Virus record (IMG/VR): IMGVR_UViG_3300005537_000001
Location: 1-64,000 of that record
DNA: 64,000 nucleotides
Reading direction: 5' to 3' (one strand)
Shown: piece after piece, positions 1,603-55,677 of the stretch
Layout of the letters: each line of letters starts with the position of its first letter
Numbering within the stretch: position 1 is the first letter of the stretch
Position numbers and translations under genes: made by a program
The notes under the pieces: generated by a model
The model's input: the letters and a program-made list of their open reading frames with translations, nothing else
The model's database searches: none
What the model was told of the DNA's origin: nothing

Positions 1603-2583
1603 ATGCAAATGAGCAAAGTTTACAAGCGAAAATATCATATCTTCTATAAAACTACATGTTTAGTAACAAATAAGTTTTATTATGGGATACATTCTACAGA
1701 TGACCTAAATGATGGTTACTTGGGAAGTGGTAGAAGAATATATCGGTCCATAAAGAAGCATGGCGCTAAAAATCATCGACGGGAAATTCTTGAATACTTT
1801 GCTACTCGTAAAGATCTTTCAAATAAAGAAGTGGAGATTGTTAATTCGGATCTTTTAGAAGATCCGATGTGTTTGAATTTAAAGCATGGTGGGGATGATG
1901 GTATATTGAGTGAAGAATCTCGTAAACAACTAGGTAAATCTGTAAAGAAAATGTGGAAACGTCTCAAAGCGGCTGGATATGTTCCACCGCCACAATCACC
2001 CGAAACTATCGCAAAGCGTGCTGCGAAAAATACCGGTAAAAAGCGAACTCCAGAACAAAAATTGAATGCTCAAAGGGCACAACGCAAAGCACAAAAGCGA
2101 TTAGCAAAAGACGTGCAATACAAGACCGAGCTGTCTAGCAAGATAAAAGTTGGTCAAGCAGCGATGTCAGAAGATGCCGTAGCTCTTATGCGGAAGCGTC
2201 AATCCGATGCAGCCATCGCAGAAAGACCAAATCGCTCTGCTGAAAGTTACGAAAAAATGGCAGCAAAGAATAGAGGTAGAAAGCGTTCGCCAGAAACCGG
2301 TCCTAAGATTGCAGCTGCCCACAAGGCAAAAACGGTTACCATTCTAGTTCCTAAAAAGAAGCAAGCTAGAACATGGACGATTGTAGCAGAAAATGGTGAT
2401 GTATTTGATGTAGAGAATCTAAAAACTTTTTGCATTGAGAAAAACATTCCACAGTCACGCATGTACAAATCACTGCTAAACAGAAAGTTTGTAGCTGGAT
2501 ATCGTGCTATTTCAGTTAGAAATACCGAATACGTTAAACCTATTTCAGTTTGGAAAACCAACCCGATTCTCAAGGCAGCGTAA
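1603..2583 (+). CDS. Free-standing GIY-YIG-type homing endonuclease with NUMOD3-like repeats
   Basis: N-terminal IFYKTTCLVTNKFYYGIHST...YLGSG, followed by basic repeats SPETIAKRAAKNTGKKRTPE and SAESYEKMAAKNRGRKRSPET. AT-rich. Confidence 0.8.
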   Translation: MQMSKVYKRKYHIFYKTTCLVTNKFYYGIHSTDDLNDGYLGSGRRIYRSIKKHGAKNHRREILEYFATRKDLSNKEVEIVNSDLLEDPMCLNLKHGGDDGILSEESRKQLGKSVKKMWKRLKAAGYVPPPQSPETIAKRAAKNTGKKRTPEQKLNAQRAQRKAQKRLAKDVQYKTELSSKIKVGQAAMSEDAVALMRKRQSDAAIAERPNRSAESYEKMAAKNRGRKRSPETGPKIAAAHKAKTVTILVPKKKQARTWTIVAENGDVFDVENLKTFCIEKNIPQSRMYKSLLNRKFVAGYRAISVRNTEYVKPISVWKTNPILKAA

Positions 2584-27036: not shown

Positions 27037-27269
27037 GCATATTCGAACGAGTCAAAGCCCAGCTTCTTACCGAGATGAACGACATAGAGGAAATGTTCAA
27101 GAATTCCGACGAACGTAAACCTGGAAACTGCCTTGAGACATCTGAAGTCGTAGTTAGATACCAGCTTAACGGGCAAGATCGCTTTTTCGTGCTAGATCAT
27201 TGGTCAATTTACGAGCTACTGCGGAAGCGGGCCGCAACTCTGCGCAGAGAGTTGGTGTCGAATGGGTAA
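27033..27269 (+). CDS. Hypothetical protein
   Basis: ATGA overlap chain. Confidence 0.5.
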   Translation: MSIFERVKAQLLTEMNDIEEMFKNSDERKPGNCLETSEVVVRYQLNGQDRFFVLDHWSIYELLRKRAATLRRELVSNG

Positions 27270-27849
27270 AATTGCATACATCATGATTGGCGCTTCGGGT
27301 TCTGGAAAATCGACCCTTATCAAGCACATCACTAAAGAAAAAATGATGCTTGGCGGAAATCCCAAAGTTTCCACCTTCTCGCTTGATTCGTGTCGCATGA
27401 ATTTCATTCACACGAAAAAGGTTGGTCAGTGGTGGTCGGATAATGATTCTGACGCCGACATGTACGCTCAAGCGTTTGAGTGCGCAACAGAACATGAAAA
27501 GGAATTCAAAGCGTTCGTTGACGCGGCGTGGGCCGAGGCGCTGAAGGCTGATGCGCTGTTTATCGACAATACCAATCTTTCGCGAAAGTCGCGAACGCGG
27601 TGGATAGCTGAAGCTCGTCAGAAGGGATTCACCGTGTGGGCCGTCCAGGTAATGAGCCCACTAAAGACCGTTATTGATCGTCAATCTACCCGCCGTGACA
27701 AATCAGTCCCAACATCAGTTGTTCGGGATATGTATTTCAGACAGGAAGAAATTCTAGTTCCTGGTGAAGCTGATTTTCTATTCGTAGCTGATGGAACGTC
27801 CAAGAATCCTACCCTTCATTCGGTGATTCATTTTGACAATAACACGTAA
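27262..27849 (+). CDS. P-loop kinase, AAA_33 / polynucleotide-kinase-like
   Basis: MIGASGSGKST, SLD, IDNTNLSRKSR, DRQSTR lid, VP..VV..M. Confidence 0.8.
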   Translation: MGKIAYIMIGASGSGKSTLIKHITKEKMMLGGNPKVSTFSLDSCRMNFIHTKKVGQWWSDNDSDADMYAQAFECATEHEKEFKAFVDAAWAEALKADALFIDNTNLSRKSRTRWIAEARQKGFTVWAVQVMSPLKTVIDRQSTRRDKSVPTSVVRDMYFRQEEILVPGEADFLFVADGTSKNPTLHSVIHFDNNT

Positions 27850-40019: not shown

Positions 40020-40026
40020 ATAAATA
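40020..40026 (+). promoter_or_regulatory. Late promoter ATAAATA
   Basis: GGATAAATACC context, identical to the site before nrdA. Confidence 0.6.
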
Positions 40027-49506: not shown

Positions 49507-49914
49507 ATGTCACAACCAGACGCAGCTAAGCAGATAATTCAAGAAGCATCGTACGTAACTATATTCGGGCACACTGTAAATGTGTTCGCATCGATGCTGA
49601 TAATCATGTTCATCGCGCTCATGTACGGCCTGTACAAGGCTCAACGCGACAAGGACAACCCGTTCGATTGGATCGATATGTTTACCGGCATCAACCAATC
49701 TACCGGTAAGCGTGAAGCTTCTTCTACCAAGATAATGCAGCTGGTTGGTGGTGTTACAGGTACATTTGTCGTTATCAAGCAAGCTTTAGTCGGCACGCTC
49801 AACTGGGACGTGTTCGCAATCTACCTGTCATACGTTGCTTCCGTCGACGGATTTACCAGATTCATGCTGGCTAAATACGGCGTAAGATCTGATTCAGCTG
49901 ATAAGCCAAGCTGA
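49507..49914 (+). CDS. Membrane protein; holin candidate
   Basis: Two to three TM segments; late position after the fibre genes. Confidence 0.4.
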   Translation: MSQPDAAKQIIQEASYVTIFGHTVNVFASMLIIMFIALMYGLYKAQRDKDNPFDWIDMFTGINQSTGKREASSTKIMQLVGGVTGTFVVIKQALVGTLNWDVFAIYLSYVASVDGFTRFMLAKYGVRSDSADKPS

Positions 49915-49918
49915 CAGG

Positions 49919-49947
49919 TGTACATTCATTCCTAAATAAACTATAAT
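49919..49947 (+). promoter_or_regulatory. Early promoter TGTACA-N17-TATAAT with a late TAAATA (49933-49938) inside its spacer
   Basis: Both motifs seen directly. Confidence 0.6.
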
Positions 49948-49966
49948 TTGTTTTTAGGAAAATGGA

Positions 49967-50440
49967 ATGAAGCTGAAAGAGCTGGTATCGAATAAGAAGA
50001 AAGGTCTTTACGTTGGGATGAGGGTTCTGGAACCATCCTGTTCTCAAATAAAGGAACACTGTCGCAGCGCCGGCATTCCAATTGCCGAATCGGCCGGTGA
50101 ACGACGCCTGCATACAACCGTTCTCTACAGCCGAAAACCATGCCCAAATTTCGTAGCTGAACAAGCTATAGTTCACGGTGCTGAATTTATCTGCTATGAG
50201 CTCTTCAACAAGAGGCATGATTCAAACCAAAAAGTTTTGGTCATCAAGCTTAACGCACCGACGATAGTTGCCCGCCATCTCACGTTGATGGCCGAACATA
50301 ACGCTACGTTCGATTTTCCGGTATTCACACCCCACATAACCATCGCGGATGGTTATAGCGGTGACATCAACTCACTTCCTACGATAAATTTTCCCATAAC
50401 TCTCGGCTTGGAATATTCAGAAGAATTGGATGACAAATGA
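49967..50440 (+). CDS. acb1: Anti-CBASS nuclease Acb1 / T4 gp57B-like 2H phosphodiesterase
   Basis: GLYV, HTTVLYSR, LV..L.....RH, ATFDF..FTPHIT and EY.E.L align motif by motif with T4 57B. Confidence 0.85.
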   Translation: MKLKELVSNKKKGLYVGMRVLEPSCSQIKEHCRSAGIPIAESAGERRLHTTVLYSRKPCPNFVAEQAIVHGAEFICYELFNKRHDSNQKVLVIKLNAPTIVARHLTLMAEHNATFDFPVFTPHITIADGYSGDINSLPTINFPITLGLEYSEELDDK

Positions 50441-51246
50441 CAGAACAAAATGAACGCGCTCGCGCATCAGAAGATACCCTCGGCGATCGGCTAAAAGCTG
50501 AAGAGCAAAAAGAAGCTGGGCGCCGCCTTAGACACGATCTACCCATCATCGCTCGCTTAGACGGTAAAGCCTTCCACACGTTTACGCGCGGCTTAGAACG
50601 TCCATACGACACCCGCTTGAGCCAGCTCATGGAAGATACCACAAAGTATCTCGTAGAAAAAACTCATGCCAAGATTGGGTACACGCAGTCCGATGAAATA
50701 AGCTTGAGCTGGTGGCAGGGCGACCTTAGCGATGGTAGTGAATCAAGCTATGCGTTTGACGCCAAAATCCAGAAGCTATGTTCAGTTTACGCGGGAATGG
50801 CATCAGGATTTTTCAATCGGCATCTCCCAGCCCGCATCCCAGAAAAGTCGGATTCAATTATCGCGTTTGATTGTCGAGTGTGGAACGTCGCCGACGTGCA
50901 TGAAGTTTTTCTAAACTATCTGTGGCGTCAAGATGATGCAATCAAAAATTCAATCTCGATGGCCGCGCAGGCGCGCTTTAGCCATAAGCAGCTTCACGGT
51001 GTCGACAGTGAGGGTAAGAAGCAGCTGCTGCGCTCGATAGGTAAACCATGGGAAGATGAGCCGCTGTTTTTCCGGATGGGAACATTTGTTCAACGCATCA
51101 CAAAGAATATTGAGTTGACTAAAGATCAGCTGGATAAGATTCCCGAAAATTATCGCCCTATCGGTACGGTCGTTAGATCTGTAGTAGAAAATATCAGATT
51201 GGGATACATCAAAGATGATCTTGCCGCGAGAAAGATCTTTGCGTAA
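50437..51246 (+). CDS. thg1: tRNA(His) guanylyltransferase Thg1-like 3'-5' polymerase
   Basis: IARLDGKAFHTFT, YTQSDEISL, FDCR, WRQDDAIKNSISM. Confidence 0.92.
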   Translation: MTEQNERARASEDTLGDRLKAEEQKEAGRRLRHDLPIIARLDGKAFHTFTRGLERPYDTRLSQLMEDTTKYLVEKTHAKIGYTQSDEISLSWWQGDLSDGSESSYAFDAKIQKLCSVYAGMASGFFNRHLPARIPEKSDSIIAFDCRVWNVADVHEVFLNYLWRQDDAIKNSISMAAQARFSHKQLHGVDSEGKKQLLRSIGKPWEDEPLFFRMGTFVQRITKNIELTKDQLDKIPENYRPIGTVVRSVVENIRLGYIKDDLAARKIFA

Positions 51247-51709
51247 CATAGGCGAAATAGCAATTGTAAGTGCCAAAATACTTACTGATTTTCAAAATGA
51301 TCATTCTGATAAAAACAAAAACAGAATATATGGATTTGCTTTTGATCATGCTGAGAAAATATATTTAGGAACGCAAGGTTGGAATGCAACTGATGGTCCT
51401 GTACCGTATGACGTATATAAAGGCAAATTTATTTACCGGACGTCAAAAATAGATTTCAGCAATATTTGTGCTGATATCAAATTGTCAATGGGTAATTCTG
51501 TATCGATTAGTTCAGATGAGTATGATTTTGGAAATTTAGGGCATAATTACAATTTTTTGGTGTACAAATATGTTGCTGATATTAATGGCGGATTCTCAGC
51601 ATTATATTCTGGCAAAATCTCTTTTCAAGATATATCCAAATATTTAATACCATCAAAAAATGCCGGCTGGTTTGCCAATTATGAGCAAATCAAATATTTG
51701 CTTTCATAA
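51215..51709 (+). CDS. AT-rich hypothetical protein; probably recently acquired
   Basis: 164-aa open frame in a conspicuously AT-rich tract; start uncertain. Confidence 0.5.
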   Translation: MILPRERSLRNIGEIAIVSAKILTDFQNDHSDKNKNRIYGFAFDHAEKIYLGTQGWNATDGPVPYDVYKGKFIYRTSKIDFSNICADIKLSMGNSVSISSDEYDFGNLGHNYNFLVYKYVADINGGFSALYSGKISFQDISKYLIPSKNAGWFANYEQIKYLLS

Positions 51710-51717
51710 ATAGACCT

Positions 51718-51909
51718 ATGCAAGAAACACTTCGCGACAAAAATGGTAAGGTGCTTGGATCCATCCGTGAGAGCGGCGGTATCATGAAGCTGTACAACGT
51801 TGGTGGTCGATTTCTCGGATCATTCGATAAAAGTTCCAACATCACGAAAGATGCTGGTGGCACGATCGTTGCTACGGCTGGAAATCTACTGGTGAGCTTG
51901 CTAAAGTGA
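51718..51909 (+). CDS. Small beta-hairpin repeat protein under a late promoter (ATAAATA 51706-51712)
   Basis: D..G..LG-type repeats. Confidence 0.55.
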   Translation: MQETLRDKNGKVLGSIRESGGIMKLYNVGGRFLGSFDKSSNITKDAGGTIVATAGNLLVSLLK

Positions 51910-52010: not shown

Positions 52011-53621
52011 ATGTCAGCGGTACTTAAGCCGAATTCAATCTTGATGGATAAGATGTTGAAGATCTTCAAGAAAGATCAAATCGAGCTCTCTCCTCAGCAG
52101 CTGGCCGTAATCAGATGGGTAATTGAAGGTAAGGGCAGTCTCAAGCTGATAGCCCGCGCCGGATGCGGTAAAACCTTCACCCTCCTCGAAGTGGTCAAAA
52201 CGATCGTAGCTCTCGGCCTTGGTGACGTTGCCTGCATGGCGTACAACAAGAAAATCGCCGATGAGATCAAGTTCAAATTTGAGAAGATTGGGTACGACTG
52301 GAAAGTCGCCCAAGCTGGAACGTGTCATTCCTTCGGATTCGCAGCTTGGAGAAAGGTAGCTCCTCACGTCAAGGTTGTCAAGAGAGGAAACGACAAGCTT
52401 GACGCGATCATCACGCAGTGCGGGTTGGAAAAGGGCGGTGCAATCTACACGCAGAATCACGGCGCCCTAGTCAAGCTTGTGTCGCTTGCGAAGCAGCGCG
52501 CCCTTGGCCACATCGGTGAAATCGAGGACATGTCCCAGTGGTTCGATATTTGGGATCACTTCGGTCTCGACGATGATGTCACCGAGGATGTGATCGCGGA
52601 AGAGCTCATCAAGTGCGCCATCAAGATCTACCGCATCTCGCTCAACCAGTGCCGCGACTACATCGACTTTGACGACATGATCCTCGCGCCTCTCTATTTC
52701 AAGGCGCGCTTCTGGCCTAAAAAGTGGATTCTTTTAGACGAATCACAAGATACCAACCTCGCGCGCCGGGCACTTGCTCTCGCTATGCTGGATCCCAAGT
52801 ATGGTCGGATGCTATTCGTAGGTGACGATTGCCAAGCGATCTACGGGTTCACCGGAGCTGACAGCGACGCGATGGATCTTCTCAAGAAGGCCACCAACGC
52901 GATCACTCTTCCGCTCAACGTAACCCGGCGGTGTCCGAAAAAGGTCGTAGCCTTAGCCAAAACGCTGGTTCCGGATTTCATAGCTCACGAAGATGCCCCT
53001 GAGGGTGTCGTGCGAGCCCTCGCGTATGGACTTCTGGAAGGAGAAAACCTCGGCAGCAGCGATGCCATCCTCTGCCGCAACACGGCCCCTCTTATTACCA
53101 CCGCCTACAAGCTACTATCCAAGGGCATCGGCTGCCGGGTGGAGGGTCGGGAAATCGGTGAAGGGTTGATCAAGCTGGCTCGCCGCTGGAAAGTCAAAAC
53201 GCTTGACAAGCTGCTCAACAAGCTAGAGGACTACGAAGCCCGCCAGACGGCAAACTTCAAGTCGAAAGGCCAGGAACATCGAATTGACGGCCTCATAGAT
53301 CAGGTTTCTTGCCTCCGCGTTATCATCGATCGCTGCTTGTTCCGCAAGCAGAACATGATCGATGATCTTGTCGCTGACATTGATGAGATGTTCGGTGACA
53401 CCGCGGCTGGTGAAAAGCCGGAGGTGCTGACGCTCAGCACGGTTCACAAGAGCAAGGGTCGCGAGTGGAAGAGAGTCTACATTCTCGGTCGTGCCAAGTA
53501 CATGCCGTCACCATATGCCAAGAAAGAATGGCAGCAGATACAGGAAAAGAATCTCGAGTACGTGGCTATTACTCGAGCGCAGTCTGAAATGATCGATCTC
53601 GAAGCCCCAACGCAGGAGTAA
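52011..53621 (+). CDS. SF1 (UvrD/Rep-like) helicase
   Basis: ARAGCGKT, LDESQD, VGDDCQAIYGFTGAD, RCP, STVHKSKGREW, YVAITRA. Confidence 0.92.
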   Translation: MSAVLKPNSILMDKMLKIFKKDQIELSPQQLAVIRWVIEGKGSLKLIARAGCGKTFTLLEVVKTIVALGLGDVACMAYNKKIADEIKFKFEKIGYDWKVAQAGTCHSFGFAAWRKVAPHVKVVKRGNDKLDAIITQCGLEKGGAIYTQNHGALVKLVSLAKQRALGHIGEIEDMSQWFDIWDHFGLDDDVTEDVIAEELIKCAIKIYRISLNQCRDYIDFDDMILAPLYFKARFWPKKWILLDESQDTNLARRALALAMLDPKYGRMLFVGDDCQAIYGFTGADSDAMDLLKKATNAITLPLNVTRRCPKKVVALAKTLVPDFIAHEDAPEGVVRALAYGLLEGENLGSSDAILCRNTAPLITTAYKLLSKGIGCRVEGREIGEGLIKLARRWKVKTLDKLLNKLEDYEARQTANFKSKGQEHRIDGLIDQVSCLRVIIDRCLFRKQNMIDDLVADIDEMFGDTAAGEKPEVLTLSTVHKSKGREWKRVYILGRAKYMPSPYAKKEWQQIQEKNLEYVAITRAQSEMIDLEAPTQE

Positions 53622-54719: not shown

Positions 54720-55067
54720 ATGGAAACAAAAGAAATTTCCGAATTCGCTGATCCTATTTTAGAAAAATTGGTCAACTCAATCTCCCCAATAGTAGAAAAA
54801 GTAGAAGTTAGCAACGAGCACGCCGTTTTAGTTCTTGGTGTTAAGCAGATTGATGACCAGGAACTTGGTGAGGGCGTCCAGACGTATTTTGCGGCGAGTG
54901 GATTCCTTTCATCTATAGCTGAAGGGCTGTACGCTGAATTGAGCGATCAAATTTCATCCGGCAACCCAGCTCTGTTTTCGGTCATTCGTCAGGTGATAAA
55001 TGACCTGGAAGAAGATTATGGAATAAGCAATGACGATCATGCCATCACCCGCCCAACCATCAATTGA
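54720..55067 (+). CDS. Acidic hypothetical protein
   Basis: Downstream of a promoter. Confidence 0.6.
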   Translation: METKEISEFADPILEKLVNSISPIVEKVEVSNEHAVLVLGVKQIDDQELGEGVQTYFAASGFLSSIAEGLYAELSDQISSGNPALFSVIRQVINDLEEDYGISNDDHAITRPTIN

Positions 55068-55068
55068 C

Positions 55069-55677
55069 ATGAATTACCGTCGAATTTATGAATCTATCAT
55101 TCAGCGTGCTAATTTACGAGCGCATGTTAGCGAGAATCAGAAACATCATATAATTCCACGACATCTTGGTGGAACAGATGATCCCGAAAATATCATTTCA
55201 CTAACGTTCAAAGAGCATTATCTTATTCACTATTTGCGTTGGAAAATTTTTGGTAGTGAAGATGATTTATCTGCATATAGAATGATGAGAGGCATTAAAA
55301 CCAGTGAAGCTCATAAATTTTTCGCTAGAAAAGGTGGGTACATAGGTGGTCAGAAAAATGCAGAATCTGGCTTATTTGATAGAATAAAAACTTTTGAGAG
55401 TATGTCGAAAGGTGGTAAAGCTGGAGCAGCTACTAATAAAAAGAATAAAGCTGGCGCATTTTTCGATAAGGAAGAACATAGACGAGTAGCTGCAATGGGT
55501 GGTCATGTAGTAGGACTCATGAATGTTGCATCGGGGCATCTTAAGCGTATATCTAAGCTTTCAAAGAGAAATACAGGAATGTTTTGGATAACTGATGGCC
55601 AATCATCTAAGATGACATCTGGGTTTATTCCAACTGGATGGAGAAGGGGTAGAATATGTAGGAGGATCCATGCCTAA
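55069..55677 (+). CDS. HNH homing endonuclease
   Basis: NY..IY..II..A...HHIIPRHLGGTDD.ENI..LT.KEH...H; AT-rich. Confidence 0.85.
   Translation: MNYRRIYESIIQRANLRAHVSENQKHHIIPRHLGGTDDPENIISLTFKEHYLIHYLRWKIFGSEDDLSAYRMMRGIKTSEAHKFFARKGGYIGGQKNAESGLFDRIKTFESMSKGGKAGAATNKKNKAGAFFDKEEHRRVAAMGGHVVGLMNVASGHLKRISKLSKRNTGMFWITDGQSSKMTSGFIPTGWRRGRICRRIHA

What the first reader, a model, noticed from the sequence alone, without database searches (positions are those of the whole stretch)
49919..51246. Acb1 and Thg1 in one translationally coupled operon under overlapping early and late promoters
Seen: a T4 57B/Acb1-like 2H phosphodiesterase (HTT...HIT) overlaps a Thg1-like gene by ATGA. Upstream, a late TAAATA is embedded in the spacer of a TGTACA-N17-TATAAT promoter. 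Established: Acb1 degrades CBASS cyclic oligonucleotides; Thg1-like proteins add nucleotides 3'-5' and can repair 5'-truncated tRNAs; 2H enzymes can also open 2',3'-cyclic phosphates. Inference: a coupled counter-defence unit combining signal destruction with tRNA end repair, expressed throughout infection.
Basis: partly seen in the sequence, partly recalled or inferred. Interest (0 to 1): 0.65.

Follow-up and report, generated by a model that had tools for sequence, protein, structure and literature searches.

The report
Lid-less Acb1 and Thg1-like gene pair
A 368-kb soil jumbo phage carries an anti-CBASS-type phosphodiesterase gene overlapping a tRNA 5'-end polymerase gene behind a host-type early promoter; one phage lineage inherits the pair together, but nothing shows that the two enzymes work together.

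Summary
The genes, the ATGA overlap and the TGTACA-N17-TATAAT element are all at the stated coordinates. The 157-aa protein is an Acb1-family 2H phosphodiesterase with an intact HxT/HxT tetrad. It stops just before the lid tryptophan (T4 W147), and a preprint reports that lid as necessary for T4 Acb1 activity. The 269-aa protein is a bacterial-type Thg1-like protein (TLP).

The promoter fits a phage-wide motif, T[G/T]TAC[A/T]-N17-TATAAT: 5 copies in the window against 0.01 expected. About ten relatives have a similar promoter upstream of Acb1.

The "late" TAAATA lacks the A of this phage's late motif (ATAAATA). CTAAATA occurs at about chance frequency, and no relative has it in the spacer.

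ATGA overlaps are routine here (64 of 360 same-strand neighbour pairs).

The adjacency is not unique: 14 related metagenomic loci keep a membrane protein, Acb1, sometimes DUF3307, then Thg1. It is confined to that clade: 0 of 72 more distant Thg1 loci have it. Most other Thg1-bearing jumbo phages checked carry Acb1 elsewhere in the genome.

I read this as two independent early accessory functions, not a demonstrated coupled unit.

The parts
49507..49914 (+). 135-aa protein with a strongly hydrophobic segment (residues about 20-44), family 'f1'. It is the conserved upstream neighbour of Acb1.
   Evidence: phrog_1322 'membrane protein', E 4e-6. A homologue lies directly upstream of Acb1 in 15 of 16 loci compared. 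Hydropathy. It starts 11 nt after the preceding 375-aa ORF, so it probably belongs to the upstream transcript.
49919..49947 (+). Sigma70-type (early) promoter: TGTACA, 17-nt spacer, TATAAT. The expected start is near 49953-49955, giving a leader of about 12-14 nt.
   Evidence: The same T[G/T]TAC[A/T]-N17-TATAAT motif occurs 5 times in the window against 0.01 expected and about 20 times in intergenic DNA genome-wide. About 10 of 14 relatives have a similar TTTAC[T/A]-N17-TAtAAT upstream of Acb1.
49933..49938 (+). TAAATA hexamer inside the promoter spacer. It is a doubtful late-promoter core because it is preceded by C, not A.
   Evidence: The phage's late motif is ATAAATA (42 against 3.3 expected in + intergenic DNA). 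CTAAATA occurs 5 times against 2.6 expected. No relative has it in the spacer. The distance to the ATG (29 nt) is typical of the motif.
49967..50440 (+). Acb1-family 2H phosphodiesterase, 157 aa. The catalytic tetrad is intact, but the C-terminal lid is cut off before the T4 W147 position.
   Evidence: Pfam PF23474. PDB 7t26, FBB1 Acb1, E 3e-12. AF2 model pLDDT 86 with FBB1 Acb1 as the top Foldseek hits. Alignment with T4 57B and Aeh1 57B shows the truncation.
50437..50440 (+). ATGA: the Thg1-like start codon overlaps the Acb1 stop codon.
   Evidence: Generic in this genome: 64 of 360 same-strand neighbour pairs overlap by 4 nt.
50437..51246 (+). Thg1-like protein (TLP-type 3'-5' nucleotidyltransferase), 269 aa.
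   Evidence: Pfam PF04446 and phrog_4717. The best solved relative is the Bacillus thuringiensis TLP 4kgk (E 8e-34); human Thg1 3otb scores only E 3e-3. D42 and D86-E87 are conserved.
51215..51709 (+). 164-aa orphan ORF with 32% G+C. It overlaps the Thg1 3' end by 32 nt and is probably in the same transcript.
   Evidence: No Pfam or PHROG match. No homologue in related loci. G+C. No + strand terminator-like site between 48000 and 54000.
51718..51909 (+). 63-aa protein. Two relatives (L043, L100) keep it between Thg1 and the UvrD-type helicase.
   Evidence: Family f11. Weak match to phrog_18536.
52011..53621 (+). UvrD-type DNA helicase, the start of the replication and nucleotide-metabolism block.
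   Evidence: phrog_1967, E 1e-93. A homologue lies downstream of the pair in L004, L006, L043, L099 and L100.

Best explanation
The window is the first 64 kb of a 368-kb jumbo phage from a soil metagenome. The phage has 44 tRNA genes, a tmRNA and a T4 gp55-like late sigma factor.

A late tail-fibre block ends with a small membrane protein. Directly after it, a host sigma70-type promoter of the phage's own recurrent kind starts a transcription unit. Its first two genes are an Acb1-family 2H phosphodiesterase and a bacterial-type Thg1-like protein.

I think the two act independently.
- The phosphodiesterase would cleave host cyclic di- or trinucleotide immune signals by the metal-independent HxT/HxT mechanism shown for T4 and FBB1 Acb1. 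Because it lacks the lid tryptophan, it may be weak or have a shifted substrate range.
- The TLP would add templated nucleotides to tRNA 5' ends, either completing them or repairing truncated ones. It would be one part of a tRNA-maintenance kit scattered over the genome: a CCA-adding enzyme, two RNA ligases and a kinase.

One lineage of jumbo phages inherits the two genes as a block. That reflects common descent inside an early accessory-gene region, not a shared pathway.

Shown here: family membership, motifs, promoter recurrence and synteny. Inferred: both enzymatic activities, the timing of expression and the independence of the two functions.
For: - Family and fold assignments.
- Catalytic residues are conserved.
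- The promoter motif recurs in the phage and in relatives.
- The pair is adjacent in all 8 IMG/VR Thg1 loci with at least 53% identity, and in 0 of 72 more distant ones.
- Upstream neighbours of 49 distant phage Thg1 genes are heterogeneous and include no 2H enzyme.
- Of 17 Thg1-bearing jumbo phage genomes, 11 carry an Acb1 above the Pfam cut-off. The only two with it adjacent to Thg1 are the clade's own members G001 and G002.
- Other RNA-repair genes lie elsewhere in this genome: positions 27280, 68829, 134922 and 276393.
- Biochemistry of relatives: Acb1 (PMC9117128) and BtTLP (PMC3061083).
- Jumbo-phage Thg1 and 2H enzymes are already catalogued as RNA-repair genes (PMC7824862).
Against: - The flanks of the cassette vary: ribonucleotide reductase and glutaredoxin or tail fibre upstream, different genes downstream. 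Membrane protein, Acb1 and Thg1 stay together down to 43% (Acb1) and 53% (Thg1) identity. That could reflect selection for linkage.
- Most clade members keep the two genes overlapping or within a few nucleotides.
- Loss of the lid raises doubt that this copy still cleaves cyclic dinucleotides.
- No expression or biochemical data exist for this phage. The only sequencing run holding the DNA is the source soil metagenome.
Confidence: 0.6

Rival explanations
1. Acb1 and Thg1 are a functionally coupled counter-defence unit: signal destruction plus tRNA end repair. They are translationally coupled and are driven by overlapping early and late promoters, so they are made throughout infection.
For: - The adjacency is conserved in at least 14 related loci while the flanks vary.
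- The ATGA overlap is paired with only a weak Shine-Dalgarno sequence before the Thg1 start.
- The early promoter is well supported.
- The phage has a gp55-type late sigma factor and an xTAAATA late motif. The hexamer sits at a typical distance from the ATG.
Against: - CTAAATA is not enriched over chance, and no relative has the motif in the spacer.
- Late expression needs no second promoter. No + strand terminator-like site separates the unit from the upstream tail-fibre transcript.
- The overlap is generic and is not conserved: relatives have a 61-nt gap or a DUF3307 gene in between.
- The pairing has a single origin. The two genes are unlinked in other jumbo phages that have both.
Confidence: 0.15
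2. A joint tRNA acceptor-end healing pair. The lid-less 2H enzyme opens 2',3'-cyclic phosphates on cut tRNA 3' ends, and the TLP rebuilds the 5' strand. Together they would counter a host nuclease that attacks the acceptor stem.
For: - Lid loss would open the pocket that, in Acb1, admits only di- and trinucleotides.
- 2H enzymes such as LigT and CPDases act on such RNA ends and share the fold.
- In T4 the Acb1 gene 57B lies three genes from the tRNA cluster. In Aeh1 it is directly followed by three tRNA genes.
- A jumbo-phage survey proposes that 2H enzymes clear cyclic ends (PMC7824862).
Against: - The sequence and the model are closest to cGAMP-cleaving enzymes: FBB1 Acb1, the BCSR5 phosphodiesterase and the penguinpox phosphodiesterase. 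LigT and CPDases reach only TM below 0.5.
- The adenine-contacting glutamate and three stacking aromatic residues of Acb1 are kept.
- Nine of 15 Thg1-linked relatives keep the lid tryptophan, so lid loss is not tied to the linkage.
- No 2H enzyme lies next to Thg1 in 72 other loci.
- The ligases, the kinase and the CCA-adding enzyme lie elsewhere in the genome.
Confidence: 0.1
3. The TLP is there mainly to add G-1 to a phage tRNA-His copy whose gene lacks it. It would then be a tRNA-maturation enzyme with no role in counter-defence.
For: - This phage and its relative G001 both have a tandem tRNA-His pair. The first copy has A or T at -1 with C73, and the second has an encoded G-1.
- BtTLP, the closest solved relative, adds a templated G-1 to C73 tRNA-His efficiently (PMC3061083).
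Against: - Control: five Thg1-negative phages (T5, KVP40, nt-1, Bxz1, Aeh1) all have tRNA-His genes without an encoded G-1.
- Many Thg1-positive phages encode G-1.
- So the trait is not specific to Thg1 carriers. The sample is small and not phylogenetically corrected.
Confidence: 0.15

Closest known systems
Acb1 (T4 gene 57B; Erwinia phage FBB1 Acb1, PDB 7t26/7t27), the anti-CBASS 2H phosphodiesterase
   Same: - Pfam family PF23474, well above the cut-off.
- 28-33% identity to the FBB1, T4 and Aeh1 proteins.
- HxT/HxT tetrad.
- Equivalents of Y12 (Y15), W74 (F80), F107 (F117) and E141 (E152).
- Same fold: top Foldseek hits with TM 0.64-0.79.
   Different: - It ends at ...EELDDK, two residues into the lid (T4 145-152), and has no W147 equivalent. 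A preprint reports that T4 Acb1 without the lid is inactive in its assay (10.1101/2025.08.21.671373).
- The genomic setting differs: it sits next to a Thg1-like gene in a jumbo phage, not next to 57A and gene 1 as in T4-like phages.
Bacterial Thg1-like proteins (Bacillus thuringiensis TLP, PDB 4kgk)
   Same: - Best solved relative (E 8e-34).
- Conserved metal-binding carboxylates.
- It has the TLP-type WRQDDAIKNSIS stretch, matching BtTLP WRQQDASKNSIS in the alignment.
   Different: - It is encoded by a phage with its own 44 tRNAs.
- Its activity has not been tested.
- It is about 25 residues longer at the N and C termini.
Thg1 genes of published jumbo phages (RsoM2USA, XacN1, GAP32, CBB, BcepSauron, phiCbK-like phages)
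   Same: Same family, at 38-52% identity. These phages also have large tRNA sets and tRNA-processing genes (PMC5852040; PMC7824862).
   Different: In those phages Thg1 is not next to Acb1. Acb1, when present, lies tens of kilobases away.
Burkholderia phage BCSR5 phosphodiesterase (2H PDE-9, PDB 9q2g/9q2y)
   Same: It gives the highest TM-scores to the model (0.73-0.75) and is a viral 2H cyclic-nucleotide phosphodiesterase.
   Different: It shares only 16-17% identity. Its lid is N-terminal. Whether the short, low-confidence N-terminal helix here plays that part is unknown.

Membership tests
Acb1 (anti-CBASS 2H phosphodiesterase) | Sequence membership in Pfam PF23474 above the gathering score | tested here: met
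   78.8 bits against a cut-off of 27. Residues 12-156 match profile positions 1-139 of 144.
Acb1 (anti-CBASS 2H phosphodiesterase) | HxT/HxT catalytic tetrad (T4 H44, T46, H113, T115) | tested here: met
   H49, T51, H123 and T125. Both histidines and T51 are invariant in the alignments; position 125 is Thr in this protein. The residues are defined in PMC9117128.
Acb1 (anti-CBASS 2H phosphodiesterase) | Base-stacking aromatic residues Y12, W74 and F107, and the adenine-contacting E141 | tested here: met
   Y15, F80 (aromatic in place of W), F117 and E152 align with them. The residues are named in PMC9117128.
Acb1 (anti-CBASS 2H phosphodiesterase) | C-terminal lid (T4 residues 145-152) with W147, which closes over the ligand | tested here: not met
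   The protein ends two residues into the lid and has no tryptophan. In-frame read-through of the TGA gives no lid-like sequence. Six of 15 clade loci share this state.
Acb1 (anti-CBASS 2H phosphodiesterase) | Compact 2H fold closest to solved Acb1 | tested here: met
   AF2 model with pLDDT 86. Foldseek ranks 7t27 and 7t26 first (E 5e-9). LigT and CPDases rank far lower.
Acb1 (anti-CBASS 2H phosphodiesterase) | Cleaves 3'3'-cGAMP and cA3 and protects the phage from CBASS | not testable with these tools
   This needs enzyme assays and plaque assays.
Thg1/TLP 3'-5' nucleotidyltransferases | Pfam PF04446 above the gathering score | tested here: met
   93 bits against a cut-off of 29.2. phrog_4717, E 8.7e-69.
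Thg1/TLP 3'-5' nucleotidyltransferases | Palm-domain metal-binding carboxylates (the RLDG aspartate and the SDE pair) | tested here: met
   D42 is invariant, and D86 and E87 are nearly invariant, in 39 homologues. They align with BtTLP.
Thg1/TLP 3'-5' nucleotidyltransferases | TLP subclass rather than eukaryotic Thg1 | tested here: met
   E 8e-34 to BtTLP 4kgk, against 6e-8 to Candida Thg1 and 3e-3 to human Thg1.
Thg1/TLP 3'-5' nucleotidyltransferases | Templated 3'-5' addition to tRNA 5' ends | not testable with these tools
   This needs an enzyme assay. Candidate substrates exist in the genome: a tRNA-His copy without an encoded G-1.
T4-type late promoter | Match to the phage's own late motif ATAAATA, about 20-40 nt before a start codon | tested here: inconclusive
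   The distance fits (29 nt), but the base before TAAATA is C. That variant is not enriched (5 against 2.6 expected) and no relative has it in the spacer.
Sigma70-type early promoter of this phage | T[G/T]TAC[A/T]-N17-TATAAT in intergenic DNA on the coding strand | tested here: met
   An exact match at 49919-49947. Five copies in the window against 0.01 expected.

The most novel reading that the evidence does not exclude
The lid-less Acb1-family enzyme has left cyclic-nucleotide signalling. With the neighbouring TLP it forms a two-enzyme unit that heals tRNA acceptor ends: the 2H enzyme removes the 2',3'-cyclic phosphate from the 3' strand, and the TLP rebuilds the 5' strand on that template. 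The unit would defeat a host nuclease that cuts tRNA acceptor stems. One jumbo-phage lineage inherits it as a cassette together with a small membrane protein.
Probability: 0.08. Interest if true: 0.7.

Novelty: new variant of a known kind. Interest (0 to 1): 0.33.

Why it matters
Acb1 is the founding phage enzyme against CBASS. Phage Thg1-like proteins have no tested role.

This locus offers three things.
- A natural set of lid-bearing and lid-less Acb1 proteins within one clade. That makes a ready-made test of what the lid does for substrate choice, including avoidance of decoy-based systems such as Panoptes.
- A phage TLP that has candidate substrates in its own genome.
- A clean example of promoter grammar in an uncultivated jumbo phage: host-type early motifs alongside T4-like late motifs.

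The gene pairing itself is a lineage trait. On present evidence it is not a new mechanism.

Tried and rejected
1. Thg1 as the G-1 adder for a G-1-less phage tRNA-His. The substrate exists. However, five Thg1-negative phages (T5, KVP40, nt-1, Bxz1, Aeh1) also lack an encoded G-1 in tRNA-His. There is no comparative support, so I keep it only as a minor rival.

2. Divergent 2H enzymes next to distant phage Thg1 genes. A Pfam scan of 49 upstream neighbours found none.

3. Independent co-localisation. Two distant Acb1 loci (L105, L108) have Thg1 3.6-4.5 kb upstream, but thymidylate synthase, dihydrofolate reductase and ligase genes lie between. This is a shared early nucleotide-metabolism region, not a pair.

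4. TAG read-through restoring the lid. The genome search flagged a TAG inside the G001 Acb1 match, and the clade carries tRNA(CUA) genes. The in-frame sequence after the stop has no lid-like residues in any lid-less locus.

5. Co-fold of the two proteins. The job returned no verdict: score 0.00, controls not run. It is not evidence either way.

6. Transcript evidence. The only sequencing run that holds this DNA is the source soil metagenome, and there is no RNA run.

7. Close relatives among 50,697 GenBank phage records. Nucleotide search found none. The best protein identities are 52% for Thg1 and 34% for Acb1.

8. Single-protein searches of IMG/VR found nothing. Searches with alignments succeeded.

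Full report
**Setting**

The window is the first 64 kb of a 368,054-bp virus record with direct terminal repeats and 48% G+C. The only public run that holds it is a soil metagenome. Almost all genes are on the + strand.

The window holds tail sheath and tube genes, the large terminase, ribonucleotide reductase and two very long tail-fibre genes. After the locus come a UvrD-type helicase, dCMP deaminase and a clamp loader.

Outside the window, the genome carries:
- 44 tRNA genes and a tmRNA;
- a CCA-adding enzyme, two RNA-ligase-family genes and an AAA_33 kinase, but no RtcB;
- a homologue of the T4 late sigma factor gp55 (tblastn E 1e-9; phrog_234 E 3e-27).

**The observation**

- ORF 49967-50440 encodes 157 aa. 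It matches Pfam Acb1 (78.8 bits against a cut-off of 27) and contains LHTTV and PHITI.
- ORF 50437-51246 encodes 269 aa. It matches Pfam Thg1 and phrog_4717.
- The two overlap by ATGA.
- TGTACA (49919-49924), a 17-nt spacer and TATAAT (49942-49947) precede the first gene. TAAATA lies at 49933-49938.

**The promoters**

I called genes crudely and examined intergenic DNA genome-wide.

A motif T[G/T]TAC[A/T]-N17-TATAAT, often with TG before the -10 element, recurs about 20 times in + strand intergenic DNA. In the window it occurs 5 times, against 0.01 expected from shuffles. About ten of 14 related phages have a TTTAC[T/A]-N17-TAtAAT in the short gap before their Acb1 gene. The early-type promoter is therefore well supported.

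The phage also has a T4-like late motif. ATAAATA occurs 42 times in + strand intergenic DNA against 3.3 expected. It mostly lies 20-40 nt before start codons, including those of the tail sheath, tail tube and tail-fibre genes.

The hexamer in the spacer is preceded by C. CTAAATA is found 5 times against 2.6 expected, and 3 times on the other strand. No relative has the motif in its promoter spacer.

No + strand terminator-like site lies between 48000 and 54000. Late transcripts from the tail-fibre promoter at 40020 could therefore read into the pair without a second promoter. I put the chance that the embedded site is a working late promoter at about one in four.

**The overlap**

Four-base overlaps join 64 of 360 same-strand neighbour pairs in this genome. 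In relatives the two genes overlap by 1-16 nt, are separated by a 13-nt or a 61-nt gap, or are separated by a DUF3307 gene. Translational coupling is plausible here because the Shine-Dalgarno sequence before the Thg1 start is weak. It is not a conserved or special feature.

**The Acb1-like protein**

Sequence, profile and fold all place it with Acb1.
- PDB 7t26, FBB1 Acb1, E 3e-12.
- An AF2 model with pLDDT 86 has 7t27 and 7t26 as its best Foldseek matches. Next come the BCSR5 phage phosphodiesterase and the penguinpox cGAMP phosphodiesterase. LigT and CPDases fall below TM 0.5.
- The HxT/HxT tetrad is kept, as are the equivalents of Y12, W74 (here F), F107 and E141 (residues defined in PMC9117128).

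Aligned with T4 57B and Aeh1 57B, however, the protein stops two residues into the C-terminal lid and lacks W147. A preprint reports that T4 Acb1 without residues 145-152 is inactive in its cell assay and calls the lid necessary for catalysis (10.1101/2025.08.21.671373).

Six of 15 clade loci share the lid-less state and nine keep the tryptophan. Reading through the stop codon restores nothing lid-like. This is an Acb1-family enzyme of a truncated variant form, and its activity on CBASS signals cannot be assumed.

**The Thg1-like protein**

It is a TLP.
- The best solved relative is the Bacillus thuringiensis TLP (E 8e-34). Matches to eukaryotic Thg1 are far weaker.
- The metal-binding carboxylates are conserved in 39 homologues.
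- BtTLP adds templated nucleotides, prefers 5'-truncated tRNAs, and adds G-1 opposite C73 efficiently (PMC3061083).

**Synteny**

Word-based protein searches found 17 relatives of the Acb1 protein and thousands of the Thg1 protein. Several contig lengths were shared between the two hit lists.

Context look-ups and IMG/VR scans gave the following.
- All 8 Thg1 loci with at least 53% identity have Acb1 just upstream. None of 72 more distant ones has it within 5 kb.
- All 8 Acb1 loci with at least 43% identity have Thg1 downstream. None of 20 more distant ones has it adjacent.
- A third gene, the small membrane protein at 49507-49914, precedes Acb1 in 15 of 16 loci. The outer flanks vary: ribonucleotide reductase and glutaredoxin or tail fibre upstream, and helicase, methyltransferase, cation-efflux or other genes downstream.
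- Upstream neighbours of 49 distant phage Thg1 genes are heterogeneous and include no 2H enzyme.
- Of 17 Thg1-bearing jumbo phage genomes, 11 carry an Acb1 above the Pfam cut-off. Outside the clade it lies from about 7 kb to over 100 kb from Thg1, as in XacN1, RsoM2USA, GAP32 and BcepSauron.

So the adjacency is real and conserved, but it has one origin. Both genes are common jumbo-phage accessories that function unlinked elsewhere.

**What the TLP might act on**

This phage and its relative G001 each have a tandem tRNA-His pair. The first copy has A or T at -1 and C73. The second has an encoded G-1. That looked like a cognate substrate, so I tested the idea against controls.

Other Thg1-positive phages are mixed. 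Five Thg1-negative phages (T5, KVP40, nt-1, Bxz1, Aeh1) all lack an encoded G-1 in tRNA-His. The trait is common in phage tRNA-His genes and is not tied to Thg1. The idea remains possible for this phage but has no comparative support.

**Verdict**

The locus is an early-promoted accessory unit that encodes a lid-less Acb1-family phosphodiesterase and a TLP. One lineage of soil jumbo phages with large tRNA sets inherits it as part of a three-gene cassette.

The late promoter and the functional coupling do not have support.

The literature already lists Thg1 and 2H enzymes in jumbo phages as RNA-repair genes (PMC7824862; PMC5852040). In the papers I searched I found no report of this pairing or of lid-less Acb1 forms.

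A co-fold job gave no verdict and is not used as evidence.

Noticed in passing
G000 (own genome) 124199-124272 and 126682-126759, outside the window; also L129 (G001) and L131 (G002): Two tRNA genes with a CUA (amber-reading) anticodon are kept in all three complete genomes of the clade. TAG still ends about 16% of the called genes, and long ORFs read normally under table 11.
   Followed up: partly
G000 139898-139970 and 139986-140061 (L121); L126 7789-7954 (G001); L173-L177: The clade has a tandem tRNA-His pair, and the first copy has no encoded G-1. tRNA-His genes of T5, KVP40, nt-1, Bxz1 and Aeh1 also have T at -1. How such phage tRNA-His are matured or charged is not explained by anything I found.
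   Followed up: partly
window 51215-51709 (+): An orphan 164-aa ORF with 32% G+C, against 48% for the genome. It overlaps the Thg1 3' end by 32 nt. It has no family match and no homologue in related loci, so it may be a recent insertion.
   Followed up: partly
L162 (T4 73952-74410) and L163 (Aeh1 115033-115527): In T4 the Acb1 gene 57B lies three genes from the tRNA cluster. In Aeh1 it is directly followed by tRNA-Glu and two tRNA-Leu genes. Acb1 genes thus sit near tRNA-related loci in unrelated phage groups.
   Followed up: no
L009 2741-3151, L010 4503-4913; also L018, L100 and probably L017 and L043: In several relatives a gene of about 136 aa sits between Acb1 and Thg1, overlapping both where its ends are called. 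The L009 copy matches DUF3307 (E 1e-7).
   Followed up: partly
window 27262-27849 (+): An ORF with an AAA_33 kinase domain (E 2e-13). It may be a polynucleotide kinase of an RNA-repair set whose other parts lie at genome positions 68829 (CCA-adding enzyme), 134922 and 276393 (RNA-ligase family).
   Followed up: partly
G000 338450-338749 (L122), and ATAAATA sites such as window 9111, 12403, 15175, 19772 and 40020: A gp55-like late sigma factor is paired with a T4-like ATAAATA motif before structural genes. The motif is nearly all on the + strand. This is T4-style late transcription in a jumbo phage that is not T4-like.
   Followed up: partly
window 1603-2583 and 55030-55677 (+): Two homing-endonuclease-like genes (phrog_314 and phrog_655). 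One lies in the structural block. The other lies just before the dCMP deaminase gene.
   Followed up: no
G000 90242-90646: ARAGORN calls a phage-encoded tmRNA with the tag peptide ANDAFFGEELRLAA.
   Followed up: no
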